Assembly: GCF_031769215.1 (NCBI RefSeq)
Contig: NW_026781899.1
Location: 310,001 to 374,000 of the forward strand
DNA from: Ylistrum balloti
Taxonomy: Eukaryota
Direction: 5' to 3'
Length of the DNA: 64,000 nt
A program made the position numbers and the translations under genes. The notes beneath the pieces were generated by a model. It did no database searches. It had not been told where the DNA came from and worked only from the letters and a program-made list of their open reading frames with translations. This document shows positions 25,044-58,497 of the stretch, in pieces. Every line of letters begins with the position of its first letter. Within the stretch, counting starts at the first letter, position 1.

Positions 25044-25286
25044 GAATGGTCATTTTAAAACTCATGTCCAGCTCTAGAATTGATATCAAGTTAGCATGGG
25101 TGGAATGAAAATCTAAGGCAAGCTGCAGGCTGCTTTCTTACAGTGGTAATTGAACAGCAGATGTCCAGCTATTGAGTGGATATCTACAAAATGTACAAGG
25201 TGCTCGCCCTCCTAGTTTGATTATTGAACAGATGATGTCTAGCTGTGGAGTCCTTATCCACAACACAACTTGAGGGGATTGTCGCC

Positions 25287-27130
25287 ACTAGTGTGATAAT
25301 GTACAACACAAACTGTAGGTGTCCCCCCCCCACAACTAGTGTGATAATGTACAACACACACTGTAGGTGTCCCCCCCCCCAACTAGTGTGATAATGTACA
25401 ACACAAACTGTAGGCGTCTCCCACCCCCCCAACTAGTGTGATAATGTACAACACAAACTGTAGGTGTCCCCCCCACCAACTAGTGTGATAATGTACAACA
25501 CAAACTGTAGGTGTCCCCCACCCCCCCCCCCCCCAACTAGTGTGATAATGTACAACACAAACTGTAGGTGTCCCCCCCACCAACTAGTGTGATAATGTAC
25601 AACACAAACTGTAGGTGTCCCCCCCAACTAGTGTGATAATGTACAACACAAACTGTAGGTGTCCCCCCCCCAACTAGTGTGATAATGTACAACACAAACT
25701 GTAGGCGTCCCCCACCCCCCCAACTAGTGTGATAATGTACAACACAAACTGTAGGTGTCCCCCCCACCAACTAGTGTGATAATGTACAACACAAACTGTA
25801 GGTGTCCCCCCCCCCCCCCCCCCCCAACTAGTGTGATAATGTACAACACAAACTGTAGGTGTCCCCCCCACCAACTAGTGTGATAATGTACAACACAAAC
25901 TGTAGGTGTCCCCCCCCAACTAGTGTGATAATGTACAACACAAACTGTAGGTGTCCCCCCTCCAACTAGTGTGATAATGTACAACACAAACTGTAGGTGT
26001 CCCCCCCAGCTAGTGTGATAATGTACAACACAAACTGTAGGTGTCCCCCCCCAACTAGTGTGATAATGTACAACACAAACTGTAGGTGTCCCCCCCAGCT
26101 AGTGTGATAATGTACAACACAAACTGTAGGTGTCCCCCCCAACTAGTGTGATAATGTACAACACAAACTGTAGGTGTCCCCCCTCCAACTAGTGTGATAA
26201 TGTACAACACAAACTGTAGGTGTCCCCCCCAACTAGTGTGATAATGTACAACACAAACTGTAGGTGTGCCCCCAACTAGTGTGATAATGTGCAACACAAA
26301 CTGTAGGTGTCCCCCCCCAACTAGTGTGGTAATGTACAACACAAACTGTAGGTGTCCCCTCCCCCCAACTAGTGTGATAATGTACAACACAAACTGTAGG
26401 TGTCCCAGCCCACCAACTAGTGTGATAATGTACAACACAAACTGTAAGTGTCCCCCCCAACTAGTGTGATAATGTACAACACAAACTGTAGGTGTCCCCC
26501 ACCCCCCAACTAGTGTGATAATGTACAACACAAACTGTAGGTGTCCCTCCCCCCCAACTAGTGTGATAATGTACAACACAAACTGTAGGTGTCCCCCCCC
26601 AACTAGTGTGATAATGTACAACACAAACTGTAGGTGTCCCCCCCCCAACTAGTGTGATAATGTACAACACAAACTGTAGGTGTGCCCCCAACTAGTGTGA
26701 TAATGTACAACAAAAACTGTAGGTGTCCCCCCCCAACTAGTGTGATAATGTACAACACAAACTGTAGGTGTCCCCCCCAACTAGTGTGATAATGTACAAC
26801 ACAAACTGTAGGTGTGCCCCCCAACTAGTGTGATAATGTACAACACAAACTTAGGTGTCCCCCCCCAACTAGTGTGGTAATGTACAACACAAACTGTAGG
26901 TGTCCCCTCCCCCCCCCAACTAGTGTGATAATGTACAACACAAACTGTAGATGTCCCCCATCCCCCCAACTAGTGTGATAATGTGCAACACAAACTGTAG
27001 GTGTCCCCCCCCCCAACTAGTGGGGTAATGTACAACACAAACTGTAGGTGTCCCCTCCCCCCCCCCAACTAGTGTGATCATTTACAACACAAACTGTAGG
27101 TGTCCCCTCCCCCACCCCCCCACCCCCCAT
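25287..27130. repeat. Minisatellite: 37-bp constant core plus variable C tract, about 40 units
   Basis: AACTAGTGTGATAATGTACAACACAAACTGTAGGTGT followed by C-rich tracts of about 5-20 nt. Confidence 0.97.
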
Positions 27131-29044: not shown

Positions 29045-29481
29045 TATACATACATGTAATACACAGGATATGTTTAAAATAGTATGGAGACAGCCAGATG
29101 AAATGTTTTTAACAGTATGTGTGTTTATATTGATCAGTCACCCTGTCAACAATGGTCATTTTAAACTGATATAATTTGCTGGTAGACAGGAAAATGTTAA
29201 GCCCTAGTAAAGTGAACTGGTGGTTTTATTTTCACAACTTTGCTGGGTAATATTAATCCACAAATCCATATTTGTACAAAATGATAAAAAGTTGAAATTA
29301 ACATTACTTTTGAACTGGAGGATTTTGGGTAGAAGTTGAAAACACAAGGTGCTCCTATTTACTGCTGTCGAATTGCAAACTGTCATTGAAAAAAAAAAAC
29401 TTTAAACTTTTAGCTCTATGGAAATATCTGATACTCCAGACCAATTTTGGCAGGCAATGAACTTTACACACACTATCATAT

Positions 29482-29734
29482 CAACAACTGGGGGGTAAAG
29501 ACACAACATCCCGCAATCAGTGAAATCAGGAAATTCCTTTCGGGAACAGTCATGGATCCAAAAGGATACAGGGTATCCACTATAAATAAGTAGAATAGAC
29601 ATCGAGAGATTTATTCCTGCTAAGAGTCATCAGATGACGGATCACTTAGATCCGAAACATGTAAACAACTCTTAGTATGAATAAATCGTGCATTGGACCG
29701 GAACTGCTTCGTGTTGTGCCTACTCTCGACGTCT
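29482..29734 (+). mobile_element. 253-bp hammerhead-bearing insert (retrozyme/Penelope-derived candidate)
   Basis: Flanked by exact 14-bp direct repeats ACACACTATCATAT (29468-29481, 29735-29748). Confidence 0.6.
29608..29687 (+). ncRNA. Minimal type I hammerhead ribozyme-like motif (U4A variant)
   Basis: CAGATGA-C-GGATC/GATCC-GAAAC-AT-GT-A core closed by a long stem I (GATTTATTC/GAATAAATC; TGCTAAGAGT/ACTCTTAGTA). Confidence 0.7.
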
Positions 29735-31192
29735 ACACACTATCATATGTATAATAGGCCCTCACCTAGAAATTCTTCAAAAATATCTACGTACATGTAC
29801 ACATCATTAATTCCATATACAACATATCATCCGGCACAATGTTACACATATATATAAGTAAAAATAGTTGAAATTATTTAGCAAAATGACCAAATACAAG
29901 GAAAATGTGAGGTCCAAAAATATTGCTTTGGATATTGGATCAGCAACTGTTTTTGTTACTAATTTAAAGTTAGCTGTCTGTTAGTTCAATCTAACTCAAT
30001 GTAGGTCATTATACTATTACATGATGGCAATGGCAAGTATATTTAATATCAAATGTCAATCCAGGTCGTTATACATTGTTGAATATCTTTTTATATTGAT
30101 GCCCAATATGCTGATGAATTAATTTGATGCAAGTATTTACTGGTAATAAGATTTTGAATGTAAAATGACATTTTGTTATTATGCAATCAGTATAAACATC
30201 GGAATTTTAAGTAGATGCTTTCACACTTTCACATTCCTTTCCTAATTAACTTTTCCAGGTCTGCAGGAGGTAGTTTCACATCTTTCTACTTCAATCATAG
30301 GATTTCATCTGAAGACAATGTCCCAATTCAAGAACCAGCTCTGGGAATGACAAGATTTTACTTGACAGATCCACAAAATGCATCAGGGGTGTTGAAGCTG
30401 GAAATGAAAACGGAAAATTATTCCTACTACTTTCAGAACATTTTAACAATTTTAAGTGTCGACAAATTTTACTGTCAGATTGTGTATATCTCTTTTTTCC
30501 TTTTTATCAAATTTTATCAAAGTTATTCATAAATGTAGAAAACATCTGCAAATGAGTCAAGATGTCTCTTATTTCATAAAAATTGCATGTAGCATCGAAA
30601 AATATAAATGCCTTTATATGTCATCTATTTAGAAGTTGGAATAAGTACAAAAAGTGACTTGAGTACTAGTCTATCAAATTTATGCATAGTTCAGACAACC
30701 AAAACATGTTACTAAAGGGGAAAAACTAAAACCGTTTCCATCTGCAATTCAATCTTACCTTTCATTATAACAGATTGCTGATCAAGAGCTGCTACCAATG
30801 TATGCATAGTGTGTTTGTAGTTCATGGACACAAGCATCAACATCCATGAACTTGTACATGTAGTTCTTCAGTCGGTGGCCTTTTTTTCTGTCGCAAATTA
30901 AACTGGCAGTAGGTTAGATCTGTTAACTTGAAATTCCTGGTTAAGTATAAATGTCAGACTTTCTGGACAAACAATTTTTTTTATTCTACAGCCTTCCAAA
31001 CTTTCTGAATCATGTTACATTCTAGACATCTGAGATTTACTTTGATTTCAAGTTATCATAAATCAAATTTTTCTGAGTTATTGGTGATTTTTAAGGCTTG
31101 TATCAAAACAAGTATGAAGTCATTTACATGTAAAATTTGTAATTGTGATATTGTCATTTGTTTCCATGTCAACGTAAAACGCACGATAAATC

Positions 31193-34334: not shown

Positions 34335-34532
34335 CTCGGGTTCGAACTAGTAACTCTTCGGTCTCTAGCCGGACACTCTAGCGCTCGACTAATGAGAAGC
34401 AACTTGACTGGGGCTCGAACTAGCAACCTTTACGCGGTCTCTAGGCGGACACTCTTGCGCTCGGCTAAAGAGAAGCAACTTTGCTGGGGTTCGAACTAGC
34501 AACCTTTCCGCGGTCTCCAGGCGGACACTCTA
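34335..34532 (-). repeat. Tandem tRNA-like units (73-76 bp, about 2.7 copies)
   Basis: TCGAAC at 34342, 34415, 34491; A/B-box-like motifs on minus. Confidence 0.7.
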
Positions 34533-42544: not shown

Positions 42545-43679
42545 GTCAAACCGATATCAAATGATGAATAAGTTTATTAAATTCATATTTTATGTGTTTT
42601 AATTACAGAAATAAATTATAAATAATATTACTGGTCACTTTTGGACAGAGCGCTCAGAGCTTCAACATCGTCGAAGTATGATAACAGCCAGTCTAGCGAC
42701 CATGAGAGGTAGCGGCACTAGAGCCTAGAATTGTACACGTAAGTACTATGTGTAGAATTAGCAACTAGTAACTAGTAACTATTTAATAATATATTTGATT
42801 AAAGGCATATTTTTGTTTAAAAATAAAGTTGATATTTTGACAGTGTGTTAATTCAAATATCGGGCGTGGTCGATTTAACAGACAGGTGGATCCGAGAAAA
42901 CCCTCTTCACACTGACGAGGAGGATATTTTTTATATATGTAGTATAATTGGATACCAACTGTTATTTCTATATAATTTATAGATTGATTTTACAGTTGTA
43001 ATGAATATGTATATGTGGTTATATTATATGATTATCTTATCGTAAGATTGTGTTTGTATTGTAGTAATATGATGTATTTCATGTTACAGGTTTTTTGTTA
43101 TTGTATTAATAAAACTTTGAAGAAAAAGAACTCAGCAGTTGTTTTGATGACATTAAAGACAACTTTTACCCTTTATGCAATCTTATGACACATATATGCA
43201 ACATGAACACCTCCAATATGCAACATGCAATTGGCCAGATCAATACTGATTTTTCAAATTAGGAAAGTTTTTCATGTATTTTTCCTATAAAGGTGACCGA
43301 GTCCAACATTACATAATTACAGAATTGGAAGCTGCGGCAGAGTTGCATGTAAATACCTTTTTTTAGTACCTAAAACTACGAACAAGATGACGGTATGTGC
43401 CGTATTAGCCATATATATGCGTGCTGCGCCCCCGCATGGTTGCCACTGTATTGATTGTTTCTGTAGTTGAGTGCATTTAATGAAATACTGTAGATTTGAC
43501 AGCAACAGTCAGTCTATCATATATATAGTTTGAACAAGCAAGAAGGAAAACAGAAATAACTACTTAGATGTATTATATTGGAGTGTATAGCTGTGTAGAA
43601 CAGTCTATGAACTAAACTTTGATGTTTCAAATGATATACTTCTGTAATTTTGGTTTACTCTTTCTAAATAATTTTCATG

Positions 43680-54728: not shown

Positions 54729-57700
54729 AATTATTGAAAAAAAGTTCTAAATAAACGAACTCATGGACACTCCTTTCTTTAATGCTATTAAACTACAGAG
54801 AAGTATAATTTTGTTTACAACTTTGTATATTGATGAAAATTAAAACATAACAAAAGGAAAAAATAATGATCATTTGATAATTACATTAAATTGTAAGACA
54901 TGACCTTAGATATATATCATAAAATCTATAATTAATTCATTTCAAAGAATTAATATATATATTTTTTTTCTTTAAAGATCAAATTAGAGAATTAAAAGAA
55001 AATTCAATATCATTTTAAGTTAATATATTGTGTATTTCAGTGGGGGCGTATCTATCATTAATATGTGTATTCCTTAATGGTAAAAATTTCAAACAGTTAA
55101 TCATGAGTTACAATGTAATACATGATAAGACTTAGAAACAAACCACTGCATTCCTTTTTCACATCAACAAACCCACAATGTTATACAAAGTAATACAGCA
55201 AATGTGCATTACCTCATTTGATATGTTAAATTATAACTGTGTATGAAGATTGAAATTAGCAAATGCAATTTTCATATAAGTTTAATGTGTATGATAAATT
55301 TCCTGGCATATGTAGCTTAAAAGGAAAGTTACAGACGCACATAAGACAAAGAACAGTTTTAAAATCGATAGATCCTTTAAACGATACACACAGAGCAGGC
55401 TACTGCAAGCATCATCTGCATTCTAATTAATATGCGAGAGAGTGCATCCAATGTATATGAAATATAAGCCGGATAAAGCGGTCTTATTCACTTTAACACG
55501 TCGTGTATGACTGCGTTGCAGTCGGTCGACTATCATTCAGATCTAGTTGTTGATTTTTTTAAATGACGAAACATGTATTCTGTCGGTCTTCTGGTTAAAC
55601 TGCATTAAGTATAAGATCGCTGTCTGTTCTATTTTTAGCTCACACTGCAGTAGCAACATTAGATTTCATTCACATAAATATATTTTGAATACCAAGAACT
55701 ACTTACCTAAAAGGAGACTATCATTTAGATACACATCTTGTAAATATTGGAACAACAGTTGATTTTAGAGACCGGTACTTCCATAAAACATGACAAACAC
55801 AGACAGCGGCAGTGATAATGCGAGTCCTTGCCGTCTGCCTCGTTTCCACCGTTCAATCCTGTATTTTTACGCATAAATTATGATGACAACCTATGTTTGT
55901 GCATATGAAACATGTATAGTATGCGATTCCTTGTGCTTTTATGGATGGTTGACTTTTCTTACCATGCTTATGAACAGAAAACACTACTGAGGTCCAGGTT
56001 GAGAACGGACGATGCACTGGCCAGCCGCCGAGTCCGCTGGTCATACTGTCGTTGACGGCATGCTCAGCGGTCGAAGGGAGGTAACTCGCAATAAGCTCAT
56101 ATTTGCTTCTAGGTTTTTTTGTTTTTTTTTTCCACTGTTATGTAAATTTTCAGATTTTAATATATCACAATATTTACATTACCATATACAAAGATAAAAC
56201 AAGGAACATAGATATAAAATAACGTTTCTGTCGTTGTGTTTGGTTCTTCACAGGAAAAAATGTTTTGTATAAAACTTTGACGTAGTTTTAACGACAGACG
56301 TCCAAACATTAGAATATCAGTATGTAAACCTTATCGTCATGAAAACTTTATCGGCGTCTTTCAAAAACGTAATAATTAGAGACAGATTTACTTAACGAAA
56401 TAATGTATACACGTTGTGTATCATTTTGAGAATTCTTGATGGCAAGAATTTAAATACAGTAAAACAATGCACATAAGGTCATTTTGTGACACAAGTTTGA
56501 ATAATGACGACACTGGGCTGGCTTTGTTTCCTGATATTTCGTATCGATTTCATAAAATTCTTATGAGAAGAAAATTAACATTCCAGAGAAATTCACAAAA
56601 TATGTCTTGATACCTACTTACTGCTAAGCGACTCATCAAACGGTATTGAAGATTGCTCAGTATACAAATTAAAACGTGTTTATCAAAGACGAAGAATAGG
56701 AATTGAGTGAAATAACATTAGAGACTTTAATGGTATATATTTTTTATCAACTAAAGTCATACTATTGGGCCACTACTGACCCTATTATAGTGCTATCACA
56801 CTGAAATGCCATAAACTGGACAGATTCTGGGTGATGCTGGTCGATAGCATGCATAAAGCGATATATACCTTTGTAAGTAATAGCTTGTGGATAGGACCTA
56901 AAGCCTTTCTCATAGTGTACTCAACACAGAAACTAAAGTCAGGCAATATCAAGGCTCGAAAAGGAATTAAATAACGATGATAAAATAAGAAAAAAAAGTT
57001 TTTTCTGTAACCAGTAAAGAGATAAATGTGCCAATCGCTACCACGAGCTTCACTTGTCCGACATTTGTAGAAACAGAGACGAGAAAATCACATCTTTATT
57101 AAGTTAGAAATGCGATCCGTGTACAGGTTTTACTACTATTCTAAACAGGAGTCATTACAATGTCTCTCAGATTTACAGCTCAATATATAGCACATTGACA
57201 AAGAATACCTGTGTTCTAATCCATCTAGGGAAAATCAAAAGATGGCAAACGATGTACGATCGTAGGCATTGTCAAACTCGAAAATTTTGGACTGAATACT
57301 ATTTATTTATTTGTTTATTTGTTTATTTTTATTTTATTTATTTATTTATTTGTTTTTTTTTGTTTATTTACCTTTTTCCTTCAGTAGAAATTACCTTTCT
57401 TTTGATGATTTTTTTAGAAATTACATACAATTAACGTTTTTAAGAAAAAATACTTTTTTCCGCCGTCGCTCTGAGATGCACCATACAATGTACATCTCTG
57501 ATACAACAATCAGTAAACGAGAGTTCCACATTTCATATGCAAGGTTAAAACATCGATTTTTACAGGAGTTATTTCCCTTGGTGCATAGTTCACTCAGTAA
57601 TACGTGTTCAAAATCATATTTCTAATAAAATCAATGAGACTTTATCAAGACTAAAATATTGAAAATCAACGGAAAATTAATTAAACATTCAAATGTAAAA

Positions 57701-58414: not shown

Positions 58415-58497
58415 AGTACGGTGGCCGAGTGGTTAAGGCGTTGGACTTAAGTTCCAATGGAGTTATCTCCGCGTGGGTTCGAACCCCACCCGTACTA
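58415..58497 (+). tRNA. tRNA-Leu(TAA)
   Basis: Acceptor stem AGTACGG/CCGTACT, A box TGGCCGAGTGG, anticodon arm TTGGA-CTTAAGT-TCCAA, long variable arm, GGTTCGAACCC. Confidence 0.95.

What the first reader, a model, noticed from the sequence alone, without database searches (positions are those of the whole stretch)
29608..29687. Minimal type I hammerhead ribozyme fold with palindromic stem III
Seen: CAGATGA (C3-A9, with A at the normally U4 position), one extra C, stem II GGATC/GATCC with a 5-nt loop, GAAA, then self-complementary ACATGT and a GUA cleavage triplet (A29663). A long stem I closes it (GATTTATTC/GAATAAATC plus TGCTAAGAGT/ACTCTTAGTA). Established: minimal type I hammerheads with an insertion after A9 and a palindromic stem III that allows dimer cleavage are typical of Penelope-like elements and animal retrozymes. 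The variant base is the centre of a palindrome GTCATC-A-GATGAC, so a micro-inversion alone could have changed T to A (speculative).
Basis: partly seen in the sequence, partly recalled or inferred. Interest (0 to 1): 0.75.

Follow-up and report, generated by a model that had tools for sequence, protein, structure and literature searches.

The report
Broken Penelope-element hammerhead ribozyme relic
The hammerhead-like fold is real but broken: two front-truncated copies of the tail of a Penelope-like retrotransposon landed head to head, so about four fifths of a ribozyme is fused to a mirror-image fragment that only imitates its closing stem. This is ordinary for this genome.

Summary
The window copy itself is not an intact ribozyme.

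- **Family:** it belongs to a small repeat family of at least 22 core copies. Other members read GUUGUU-CUGAUGA-C-GGAUC-loop-GAUCC-GAAAC-AUGU-A|AACAAC, a canonical Penelope-type minimal type I hammerhead.
- **Origin:** in three loci the family continues upstream into a GIY-YIG endonuclease ORF. Related full-length elements (RT + GIY-YIG + zinc-finger ORF2) carry the same ribozyme architecture with covarying stems I and II.
- **Window copy:** homology to the family begins at G5 (29633), one base past the centre of the palindrome. The "C3" and "A4" are the complement of G5-U4 of an opposite-strand copy. The "long stem I" is what remains of that inverted copy after two deletions.
- **Insertion:** the whole 253-bp insert (29482-29734) has a 14-bp target duplication. 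It shows the known Penelope signature of inverted 5'-truncated arms with a one-sided extension.
- **Model score:** a covariance model built from this genome's hammerheads gives the window copy 36.9 bits with no stem I. Intact family copies score 52-63 bits.
- **Not tested:** no RNA data exist, so cleavage was not tested.

Earlier notes of this scan reached the same kind of conclusion on other DNA of this genome. Low interest.

The parts
29468..29481 (.). left copy of the 14-bp target-site duplication ACACACTATCATAT
   Evidence: identical 14-mer at 29735-29748
29482..29603 (-). module A: the ~120-nt extension ('tail') that follows the element's usual 3' end. It belongs to the minus-strand arm.
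   Evidence: 20 genomic matches, nearly all joined to module B in the order B(+)-A(-); aligned end to end with the C7 unit
29604..29634 (-). remnant of the minus-strand arm of module B. It keeps UCUGAUG(A) (minus strand of 29626-29634) and ACUCUUAGCAGGAAUAAAU. It has lost 31 nt (stem II, GAAA, helix III, cleavage site) and about 33 nt further on.
   Evidence: alignment of the window's minus strand to the intact unit of locus L016
29633..29734 (+). plus-strand arm of module B, 5'-truncated at hammerhead position G5, running to the element's usual 3' end ...CTCGACGTCT(A)
   Evidence: homology to 20+ copies starts at 29630-29633 and ends at 29735
29631..29664 (+). partial hammerhead. G5-A9, extra C, stem II, G12-A14, palindromic helix III, GUA site (cleavage would fall after A29663) and A1.1 are authentic. 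C29631 and A29632 are junction letters.
   Evidence: R1 model positions 8-44 only, 36.9 bits
29735..29748 (.). right copy of the 14-bp target-site duplication

Best explanation
Window 29482-29734 is one old insertion made by a Penelope-like retrotransposon (PLE). It consists of two 5'-truncated copies of the element's 3' end joined head to head, with their 3' ends facing outward.

- The minus-strand arm carries a ~120-nt extension (module A) and later lost two internal pieces.
- The plus-strand arm starts at G5 of the element's hammerhead and runs to the usual 3' end.
- The parent family has a canonical PLE-type minimal type I hammerhead about 70 nt before its usual 3' end: GUUGUU / CUGAUGA / extra C / 5-bp stem II / GAAAC / AUGU / A | AACAAC.
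- By published work, ribozymes of this kind are thought to cleave tandem PLE transcripts as dimers through the palindromic helix III.
- The window copy keeps stem II, G5-A9, GAAA, helix III and the GUA site. It lacks its own C3, U4 and 5' strand of stem I.
- The apparent C-A and the long closing helix are by-products of the inverted junction.
- I infer that the copy is catalytically dead or nearly so and has no function of its own.

Shown: homology, junction position, target duplication, link to PLE genes, covariation among families. Inferred: the double-strand priming mechanism and the loss of activity.
For: 1. Other copies read ..TTGTTGTT-CTGATGA-C-GGATC-GCTTG-GATCC-GAAAC-ATGT-A-AACAAC... 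Of 22 pattern matches, 14 keep CUGANGA. Seven of the other eight, the window's among them, are copies that start inside the core; the eighth is a point change (CTGGTGA).
2. Homology of the window copy to more than 20 copies starts at 29630-29633 and ends at 29735.
3. The window's minus strand aligns with the intact unit of L016 from UCUGAUG through the whole of module A, with two deletions.
4. A 14-bp target duplication flanks the composite here. Duplications of 10-16 bp flank the family's insertions in seven other loci, composite or single-arm.
5. The architecture B(-)/B(+)/A(-), with different breakpoints in each locus, recurs in about 15 loci.
6. Upstream of the ribozyme, loci C799, C7 and C495 continue into an ORF that hits Pfam GIY-YIG at E 2.5e-4 to 4.7e-4.
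7. That ORF's relatives in the genome sit in long frames with RVT_1 plus GIY-YIG above the Pfam cut-offs. A C2H2 ORF2 follows, then a hammerhead of the same architecture.
8. Across 19 hammerheads from several families, 84.6% of cells pair against at most 51.5% for slid controls. All 6 stem II pairs show two-sided changes, and 0 of 500 shuffles reach the observed score.
9. Model R1 scores intact B copies at 52-63 bits over their full length. The window copy scores 36.9 bits over model positions 8-44 only.
10. Published descriptions fit. PLE min-HHRs have an extra nucleotide between 9 and 10.1, a G10.1-C11.1 pair, palindromic 15.2-16.2 and a short helix I (PMC4209133). PLE insertions often have an adjacent inverted 5'-truncated copy and a one-sided tail (PMC8557442). 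A PLE protein extends both target strands and starts reverse transcription at two internal RNA sites (PMC11167929).
Against: - The GIY-YIG hits in the B-family loci themselves are just below Pfam's cut-off (20.8 and 21.7 against 22.6 bits).
- No full-length parent with this exact ribozyme was found.
- Module A is about 120 nt, three to four times longer than the published 30-40-bp tail. Calling it a tail is therefore an inference.
- No RNA run holds the stretch, so neither transcription nor absence of cleavage was observed.
- Inactivity of an A4 core rests on established mutational knowledge of the hammerhead, not on a test here.
- Within the B family alone there are no compensatory changes. 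Covariation is seen only between families.
Confidence: 0.85

Rival explanations
1. The window copy is a working, atypical hammerhead. The long inverted-repeat helix serves as stem I and the core tolerates A at position 4, perhaps cleaving as a dimer through ACAUGU.
For: Every core position except 4 is present. Stem II, helix III and a GUA site are intact. A very stable closing helix exists.
Against: - U4 is invariant in all 19 aligned hammerheads of this genome, although the search pattern allowed A. It is one of the conserved core nucleotides of the uridine turn (PMC6155905; mutational data from general knowledge).
- Next to the core the pseudo-stem has a single pair followed by a 2x3 internal loop.
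- The model aligns no stem I.
- The helix is explained by an inverted duplication.
- Even intact PLE min-HHRs cleave poorly in vitro (PMC4209133).
Confidence: 0.04
2. The element is a non-LTR retrozyme: a non-autonomous tandem repeat that is transcribed, cut out by two hammerheads and circularised.
For: The copies are short and non-coding, carry a type I hammerhead and a target duplication. Animal retrozymes are proposed to derive from PLE pLTRs (bioRxiv 10.64898/2026.07.22.740005).
Against: - No locus of this family has two ribozymes in the same orientation. Pairs are head to head or are segmental duplicates tens of kb apart.
- Copies are 5'-truncated series sharing a common 3' end.
- Three loci run upstream into a PLE endonuclease ORF.
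- The family has few copies, roughly 20-60.
Confidence: 0.07
3. The 80-nt hairpin is a source of small RNAs (a hairpin siRNA or miRNA-like precursor), and the ribozyme likeness is beside the point.
For: Both strands fold at about -31 kcal/mol with z near -7.
Against: - The hairpin is a by-product of the insertion mechanism.
- Other loci have palindromes with different breakpoints, so nothing conserves this one.
- Rfam finds no miRNA family.
- No RNA data are available.
Confidence: 0.03
4. It is a cut-and-paste miniature DNA transposon (MITE), because it has inverted repeats and a target duplication.
For: An internal inverted repeat and a 14-bp flanking duplication are present.
Against: - The two termini of the insert are not inverted repeats of each other.
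- Duplication length varies from 10 to 16 bp between loci.
- Copies form a 5'-truncation series with a fixed 3' end.
- The family is linked to RT/GIY-YIG elements.
Confidence: 0.01

Closest known systems
Minimal hammerhead ribozymes of metazoan Penelope-like elements (Cervera & de la Pena 2014, PMC4209133)
   Same: The family consensus has:
- type I topology
- a CUGAUGA...GAAA core
- an unpaired nucleotide between A9 and G10.1
- a G10.1-C11.1 pair
- a short helix I
- helix III reduced to the palindrome ACAUGU (ACGUGU or ACUAGU in relatives)
- a position in the PLE's terminal repeat region, 3' of the RT-EN gene
- many covarying families within one genome
   Different: The window copy lacks C3, U4 and the 5' strand of helix I. 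Stem II is 5 bp here, against 6-8 bp in the schistosome examples.
Penelope-like element insertion architecture: inverted 5'-truncated copy plus one-sided tail (Craig et al. 2021, PMC8557442; Frangieh et al. 2024, PMC11167929)
   Same: - Two arms with 3' ends facing outward and 5'-truncated ends meeting in the middle.
- An extension on one arm only.
- Target duplications of variable length.
- Strong 5' truncation.
   Different: The extension is about 115-125 nt rather than 30-40 bp. Both arms here are only about 100-230 nt, so no coding part is present.
Animal non-LTR retrozymes (de la Pena and co-workers 2020, PMC7229834)
   Same: Type I hammerhead in short non-coding repeats of an invertebrate genome, probably mobilised by PLE machinery.
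   Different: No tandem direct arrangement, hence no way to excise a unit-length RNA. There is no evidence of circular RNA.
Newt/salamander satellite hammerheads that act as dimers (Forster et al. 1988, cited in PMC4209133 and PMC7229834)
   Same: A weak helix III with a palindromic loop that can form an extended helix between two ribozymes.
   Different: Those sit in long tandem satellites and have conserved loop 1-loop 2 contacts. Neither is seen here.

Membership tests
Hammerhead ribozyme, type I (this window copy) | Complete conserved core: C3 U4 G5 A6 N7 G8 A9 ... G12 A13 A14, A15.1-U16.1, H17 | tested here: not met
   Position 4 is A (29632). C3 and A4 are junction letters from the opposite-strand copy. 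All other core positions are present.
Hammerhead ribozyme, type I (this window copy) | Helix I formed by the sequences directly flanking C3 and H17, homologous to the family's helix I | tested here: not met
   The family's helix I is GUUGUU/AACAAC. The window has the 3' strand AACAAC but not the 5' strand. R1 aligns model positions 8-44 only.
Hammerhead ribozyme, type I (this window copy) | Helix II and helix III present with covariation support | tested here: met
   GGAUC/GAUCC and ACAUGU are present. Across 19 hammerheads of the genome all 6 stem II pairs show two-sided changes.
Hammerhead ribozyme, type I (this window copy) | Self-cleavage 3' of H17 | not testable with these tools
   No RNA run holds the stretch. 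The only run is contigs, not on record as RNA.
PLE minimal hammerhead (the repeat family as a whole) | Extra nucleotide between 9 and 10.1; G10.1-C11.1; palindromic 15.2-16.2; short helix I (PMC4209133) | tested here: met
   a C or U follows A9 in 18 of 19 aligned sequences and G-C closes stem II in 13 of 19. The six letters from A15.1 to U16.1 are ACAUGU, ACGUGU or ACUAGU in 18 of 19 and helix I has 3-7 pairs.
PLE minimal hammerhead (the repeat family as a whole) | Lies in the terminal repeat region of an element encoding RT and a GIY-YIG endonuclease | tested here: met
   B-family loci C799/C495 have a GIY-YIG ORF about 460-900 nt upstream at E 2.5e-4 to 4.7e-4, just under Pfam's cut-off. 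Relatives L075 and L069 have RVT_1 plus GIY-YIG above the cut-offs and the same ribozyme downstream.
Penelope-like element insertion (this window insert) | Inverted 5'-truncated copy adjacent to the direct copy, with an extension at one end only, flanked by a target duplication | tested here: met
   The caveat is that the extension is about 120 nt, longer than described.
Penelope-like element insertion (this window insert) | RT/EN coding sequence within the insert | tested here: not met
   The insert is 253 bp and both arms are truncated far 3' of the genes. It is a fragment, not an element.
Non-LTR retrozyme | Tandem direct repeats of about 170-400 bp, each with a hammerhead, giving unit-length linear and circular RNA | tested here: not met
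   No same-orientation ribozyme pairs at unit spacing in this family. RNA could not be tested.

The most novel reading that the evidence does not exclude
The family may record how this mollusc PLE lineage integrates.
- In every composite locus one arm starts at the usual 3' end and the other about 120 nt further downstream. This would fit priming on both target strands from two reverse-transcription start sites, set much further apart than the 30-40 nt known from Anolis and Drosophila elements.
- The inner (5') ends of the arms cluster at two places that bracket the ribozyme. About 15 arms end at the CUGAUGA edge. About 13 arms end 6-28 nt 3' of the predicted cleavage site.
- This would mean that the folded or cleaved hammerhead, or a transcription start beside it, decides where cDNAs end.
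Probability: 0.2. Interest if true: 0.4.

Novelty: already known. Interest (0 to 1): 0.12.

Why it matters
It matters little in itself. This is one decayed fragment among hundreds to thousands of Penelope-type hammerhead motifs in this genome. Its value is as a caution: head-to-head PLE insertions place half a ribozyme next to its own mirror image, which creates convincing but false "stem I" helices and false core variants. The family gives a small, clean data set (about 28 independent insertions with mapped breakpoints and target duplications) that bears on the still poorly understood PLE integration mechanism.

Tried and rejected
- **Rfam:** tried at gathering score on the window and at E <= 10 on 29400-29900. 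No hammerhead hit. It also misses the intact copy in L008, so it is uninformative for this minimal architecture.
- **Micro-inversion or point mutation for A4:** rejected, because homology to all other copies stops at the palindrome centre and the left arm is the reverse complement of the element.
- **RNA evidence:** only one public run holds the stretch, and it is contigs not on record as RNA. It shows that the insertion is present in that sample (a contig spans 28875-29721), and nothing on expression or cleavage. No empty-site allele was seen.
- **Thermodynamic monomer and dimer folds of intact copies:** stems I and II are predicted, but nearest-neighbour folding cannot judge a hammerhead core or the helix III dimer, so I did not use it.
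- **Genome-wide head-to-head junctions GTCATCAG..CTGATGAC:** 12 sites against 2 in the control. This is too few to claim a general hot spot.
- **Full-length parent:** a search for one with exactly this ribozyme found only 5'-truncated copies.
- **Organism:** earlier notes of this scan call the genome a scallop's. I did not verify this.

Full report
**1. The observation.**

- CAGATGA at 29631-29637, with A in place of U4 at 29632
- an extra C at 29638
- stem II GGATC/GATCC at 29639-29653
- GAAA at 29654-29657
- the self-complementary ACATGT at 29657-29662
- A17 at 29663
- two outer helices, 29608-29627 against 29668-29687

The 80 nt fold at -31 kcal/mol, z = -7.2. The complementary strand folds just as well, which is what a DNA inverted repeat gives.

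Rfam reports no hammerhead at its gathering scores or at E <= 10. It also fails on an intact family copy, so this says nothing.

**2. The stretch is one copy of a repeat family, and other copies have the canonical core.**

A search of the window's own 648-Mb assembly gave 59 matches. The pattern CTGATGACGGATCNNNNNGATCCGAAAC with up to 2 mismatches occurs 22 times, against 0 for the reversed control.

Laid side by side, the other copies read TTGTTGTT-CTGATGA-C-GGATC-GCTTG-GATCC-GAAAC-ATGT-A-AACAAC. That is CUGAUGA with a 6-bp helix I, GUUGUU/AACAAC. A subfamily has GAAAC-GUGU-U, which is still self-complementary through G-U pairs and keeps a permitted GUU site.

**3. Where the window copy departs.**

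Homology of the window to more than 20 copies begins at 29630-29633 and ends at 29735. It therefore begins at or within three bases of the centre (29632) of the palindrome GTCATC-A-GATGAC.

The window's minus strand aligns with an intact unit (L016) as follows:
- it starts at UCUGAUG;
- it skips 31 nt (stem II, GAAA, helix III, cleavage site);
- it resumes with ACUCUUAGCAGGAAUAAAU;
- it skips about 33 nt;
- it then runs through the element's end ..CUCGAUGUCUA and the whole of a further module A, down to 29482.

C29631-A29632 are the complement of G5-U4 of that minus-strand copy. The plus-strand ribozyme starts only at G5 (29633), and the two arms share 2 nt (29633-29634).

**4. One insertion event.**

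The composite 29482-29734 (253 bp) is flanked by a perfect 14-bp duplication, ACACACTATCATAT, at 29468-29481 and 29735-29748.

Seven other loci of the family, composite or single-arm, have flanking duplications of 10-16 bp.

The module map of about 28 independent loci shows a recurrent architecture B(-)/B(+)/A(-):
- two arms of module B with their common 3' end (B106, ..CTCGACGTCTA) outward;
- truncated 5' ends meeting in the middle, at different positions in each locus (1/1, 1/3, 1/74, 44/44, 49/49, 41/50, 47/57 and others);
- module A (115-125 nt) on one arm only.

**5. The parent is a Penelope-like element.**

In loci C799 and C7 the homology runs at least 660 bp upstream of the ribozyme, and C495 shares the stretch further up. 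The ORFs there hit Pfam GIY-YIG at E 4.7e-4 and 2.5e-4, just under the curated cut-off.

Searching the genome with that ORF found more than 100 relatives, several inside long open frames.

All the relatives examined carry, 3' of the genes, a hammerhead of the same build. Examples are AUUGUC-CUGAUGA-C-GGCCGC-AUA-GCGGUC-GAAAC-AUGU-A|GACAAU and CUGAGGA-Y-GGCAUAC-CUA-GUGUGCC-GAAAC-UAGU-C.

**6. The fold is supported between families.**

An alignment of 19 hammerheads from several families, with the window copy excluded, gave the following on the hammerhead structure:
- 84.6% paired cells, against at most 51.5% when the partners are slid;
- two-sided changes in all 6 stem II pairs and in 3 of 6 helix I pairs;
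- 0 of 500 shuffles reaching the observed covariation score.

Within the B family alone the changes are one-sided only.

A covariance model from this alignment (R1) scores intact B copies at 52-63 bits end to end. The window copy scores 36.9 bits, E = 2e-8, over model positions 8-44 only, with no helix I. In the whole genome 147 of the 150 candidates scored matched at E <= 0.001.

**7. Comparison with what is known.**

Cervera and de la Pena (PMC4209133) list the marks of metazoan PLE min-HHRs:
- a nucleotide between 9 and 10.1;
- the G10.1-C11.1 pair;
- palindromic 15.2-16.2;
- a short helix I and a long helix II;
- a likely dimeric mode of action, with low activity in vitro.

The family consensus meets these marks.

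Craig et al. (PMC8557442) describe PLE insertions as strongly 5'-truncated, often with an inverted 5'-truncated copy adjacent and a 30-40-bp tail at one end only. Frangieh et al. (PMC11167929) show that a PLE protein cuts and extends both target strands. They also show that it starts reverse transcription at two internal RNA sites, which explains the tail, and that ribozyme cleavage is not needed for insertion in vitro.

The window insert fits this picture, except that the one-sided extension is about 120 nt.

**8. How it most likely works.**

*Shown:* the insert is a PLE-made composite of two truncated 3' ends.

*Inferred:*
- It arose by reverse transcription primed on both target strands, one from the usual start (B106) and one from a start about 120 nt further downstream.
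- The two cDNAs were joined at a 2-nt overlap inside the ribozyme core.
- The minus arm later lost two pieces, as palindromes tend to do.
- In the parent element the ribozyme would act on tandem transcripts as a dimer.
- In this copy the core lacks U4 and a true helix I, so I expect no meaningful cleavage. The role of U4 in the uridine turn and the conserved core are in PMC6155905. The strong loss of activity on mutating it is established knowledge that I did not test.

**9. What could not be done.**

Only one public run holds the stretch, and it is kept as contigs and is not on record as RNA. It confirms that the insertion is present in that sample but gives no information on transcription or cleavage.

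**10. Verdict.**

The stretch is a true relative of a PLE hammerhead, but a broken one whose "stem I" and "U4A" are artefacts of a head-to-head insertion. It is an ordinary feature of this genome, already explained by published PLE biology. Earlier notes of this scan reached the same kind of conclusion on other pieces of the same genome.

The only mildly new points are the long one-sided extension and the two clusters of arm breakpoints that bracket the ribozyme. I leave both unexplained.

Noticed in passing
loci L001-L050 (module B positions; window 29630 = B1): The inner 5' ends of the arms cluster at B1-5, the CUGAUGA edge (about 15 arms), and at B41-63, just 3' of helix I and the predicted cleavage site (about 13 arms). 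Only 6 copies run on upstream. The cause could be a barrier to reverse transcriptase at the folded ribozyme, a transcription start, or cleaved templates.
   Followed up: partly
window 29482-29603 and loci: Module A, a 115-125-nt extension, is always on one arm only of composite insertions. It also follows the ribozyme region of a longer PLE fragment in C7. It behaves like the PLE 'tail' but is three to four times longer than described.
   Followed up: partly
L075:707-1372 (-) and L064:3447-4136 (-): This PLE lineage has a second ORF with C2H2 zinc fingers between the RT-EN gene and the hammerhead.
   Followed up: partly
window 25275-27100: A satellite of about 44-48-nt units, more than 30 copies at 60-99% identity to the reference copy.
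   Followed up: no
window 34335-34532: Three tandem 76-nt units containing GGTTCGAACT-like motifs, possibly tRNA- or SINE-derived. They lie inside the region another note assigns to a zinc-finger gene.
   Followed up: no
window 58415-58497: A tRNA gene (Rfam RF00005, 63 bits). At 83 nt it may have a long variable arm or an intron.
   Followed up: no
window 55876-55921 and 43136-43165: Weak hits of the genome-specific hammerhead model (12.6 and 14 bits, E 0.35 and 0.14). The first reads AUGAUGAC...UGAAACAUGUA. They are possibly decayed relics, possibly chance.
   Followed up: partly
L064:4541-6029 (-), contig C495: Integrase domains of an LTR retrotransposon (rve and others) lie directly upstream of the truncated PLE fragment. 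This is a nested insertion.
   Followed up: no
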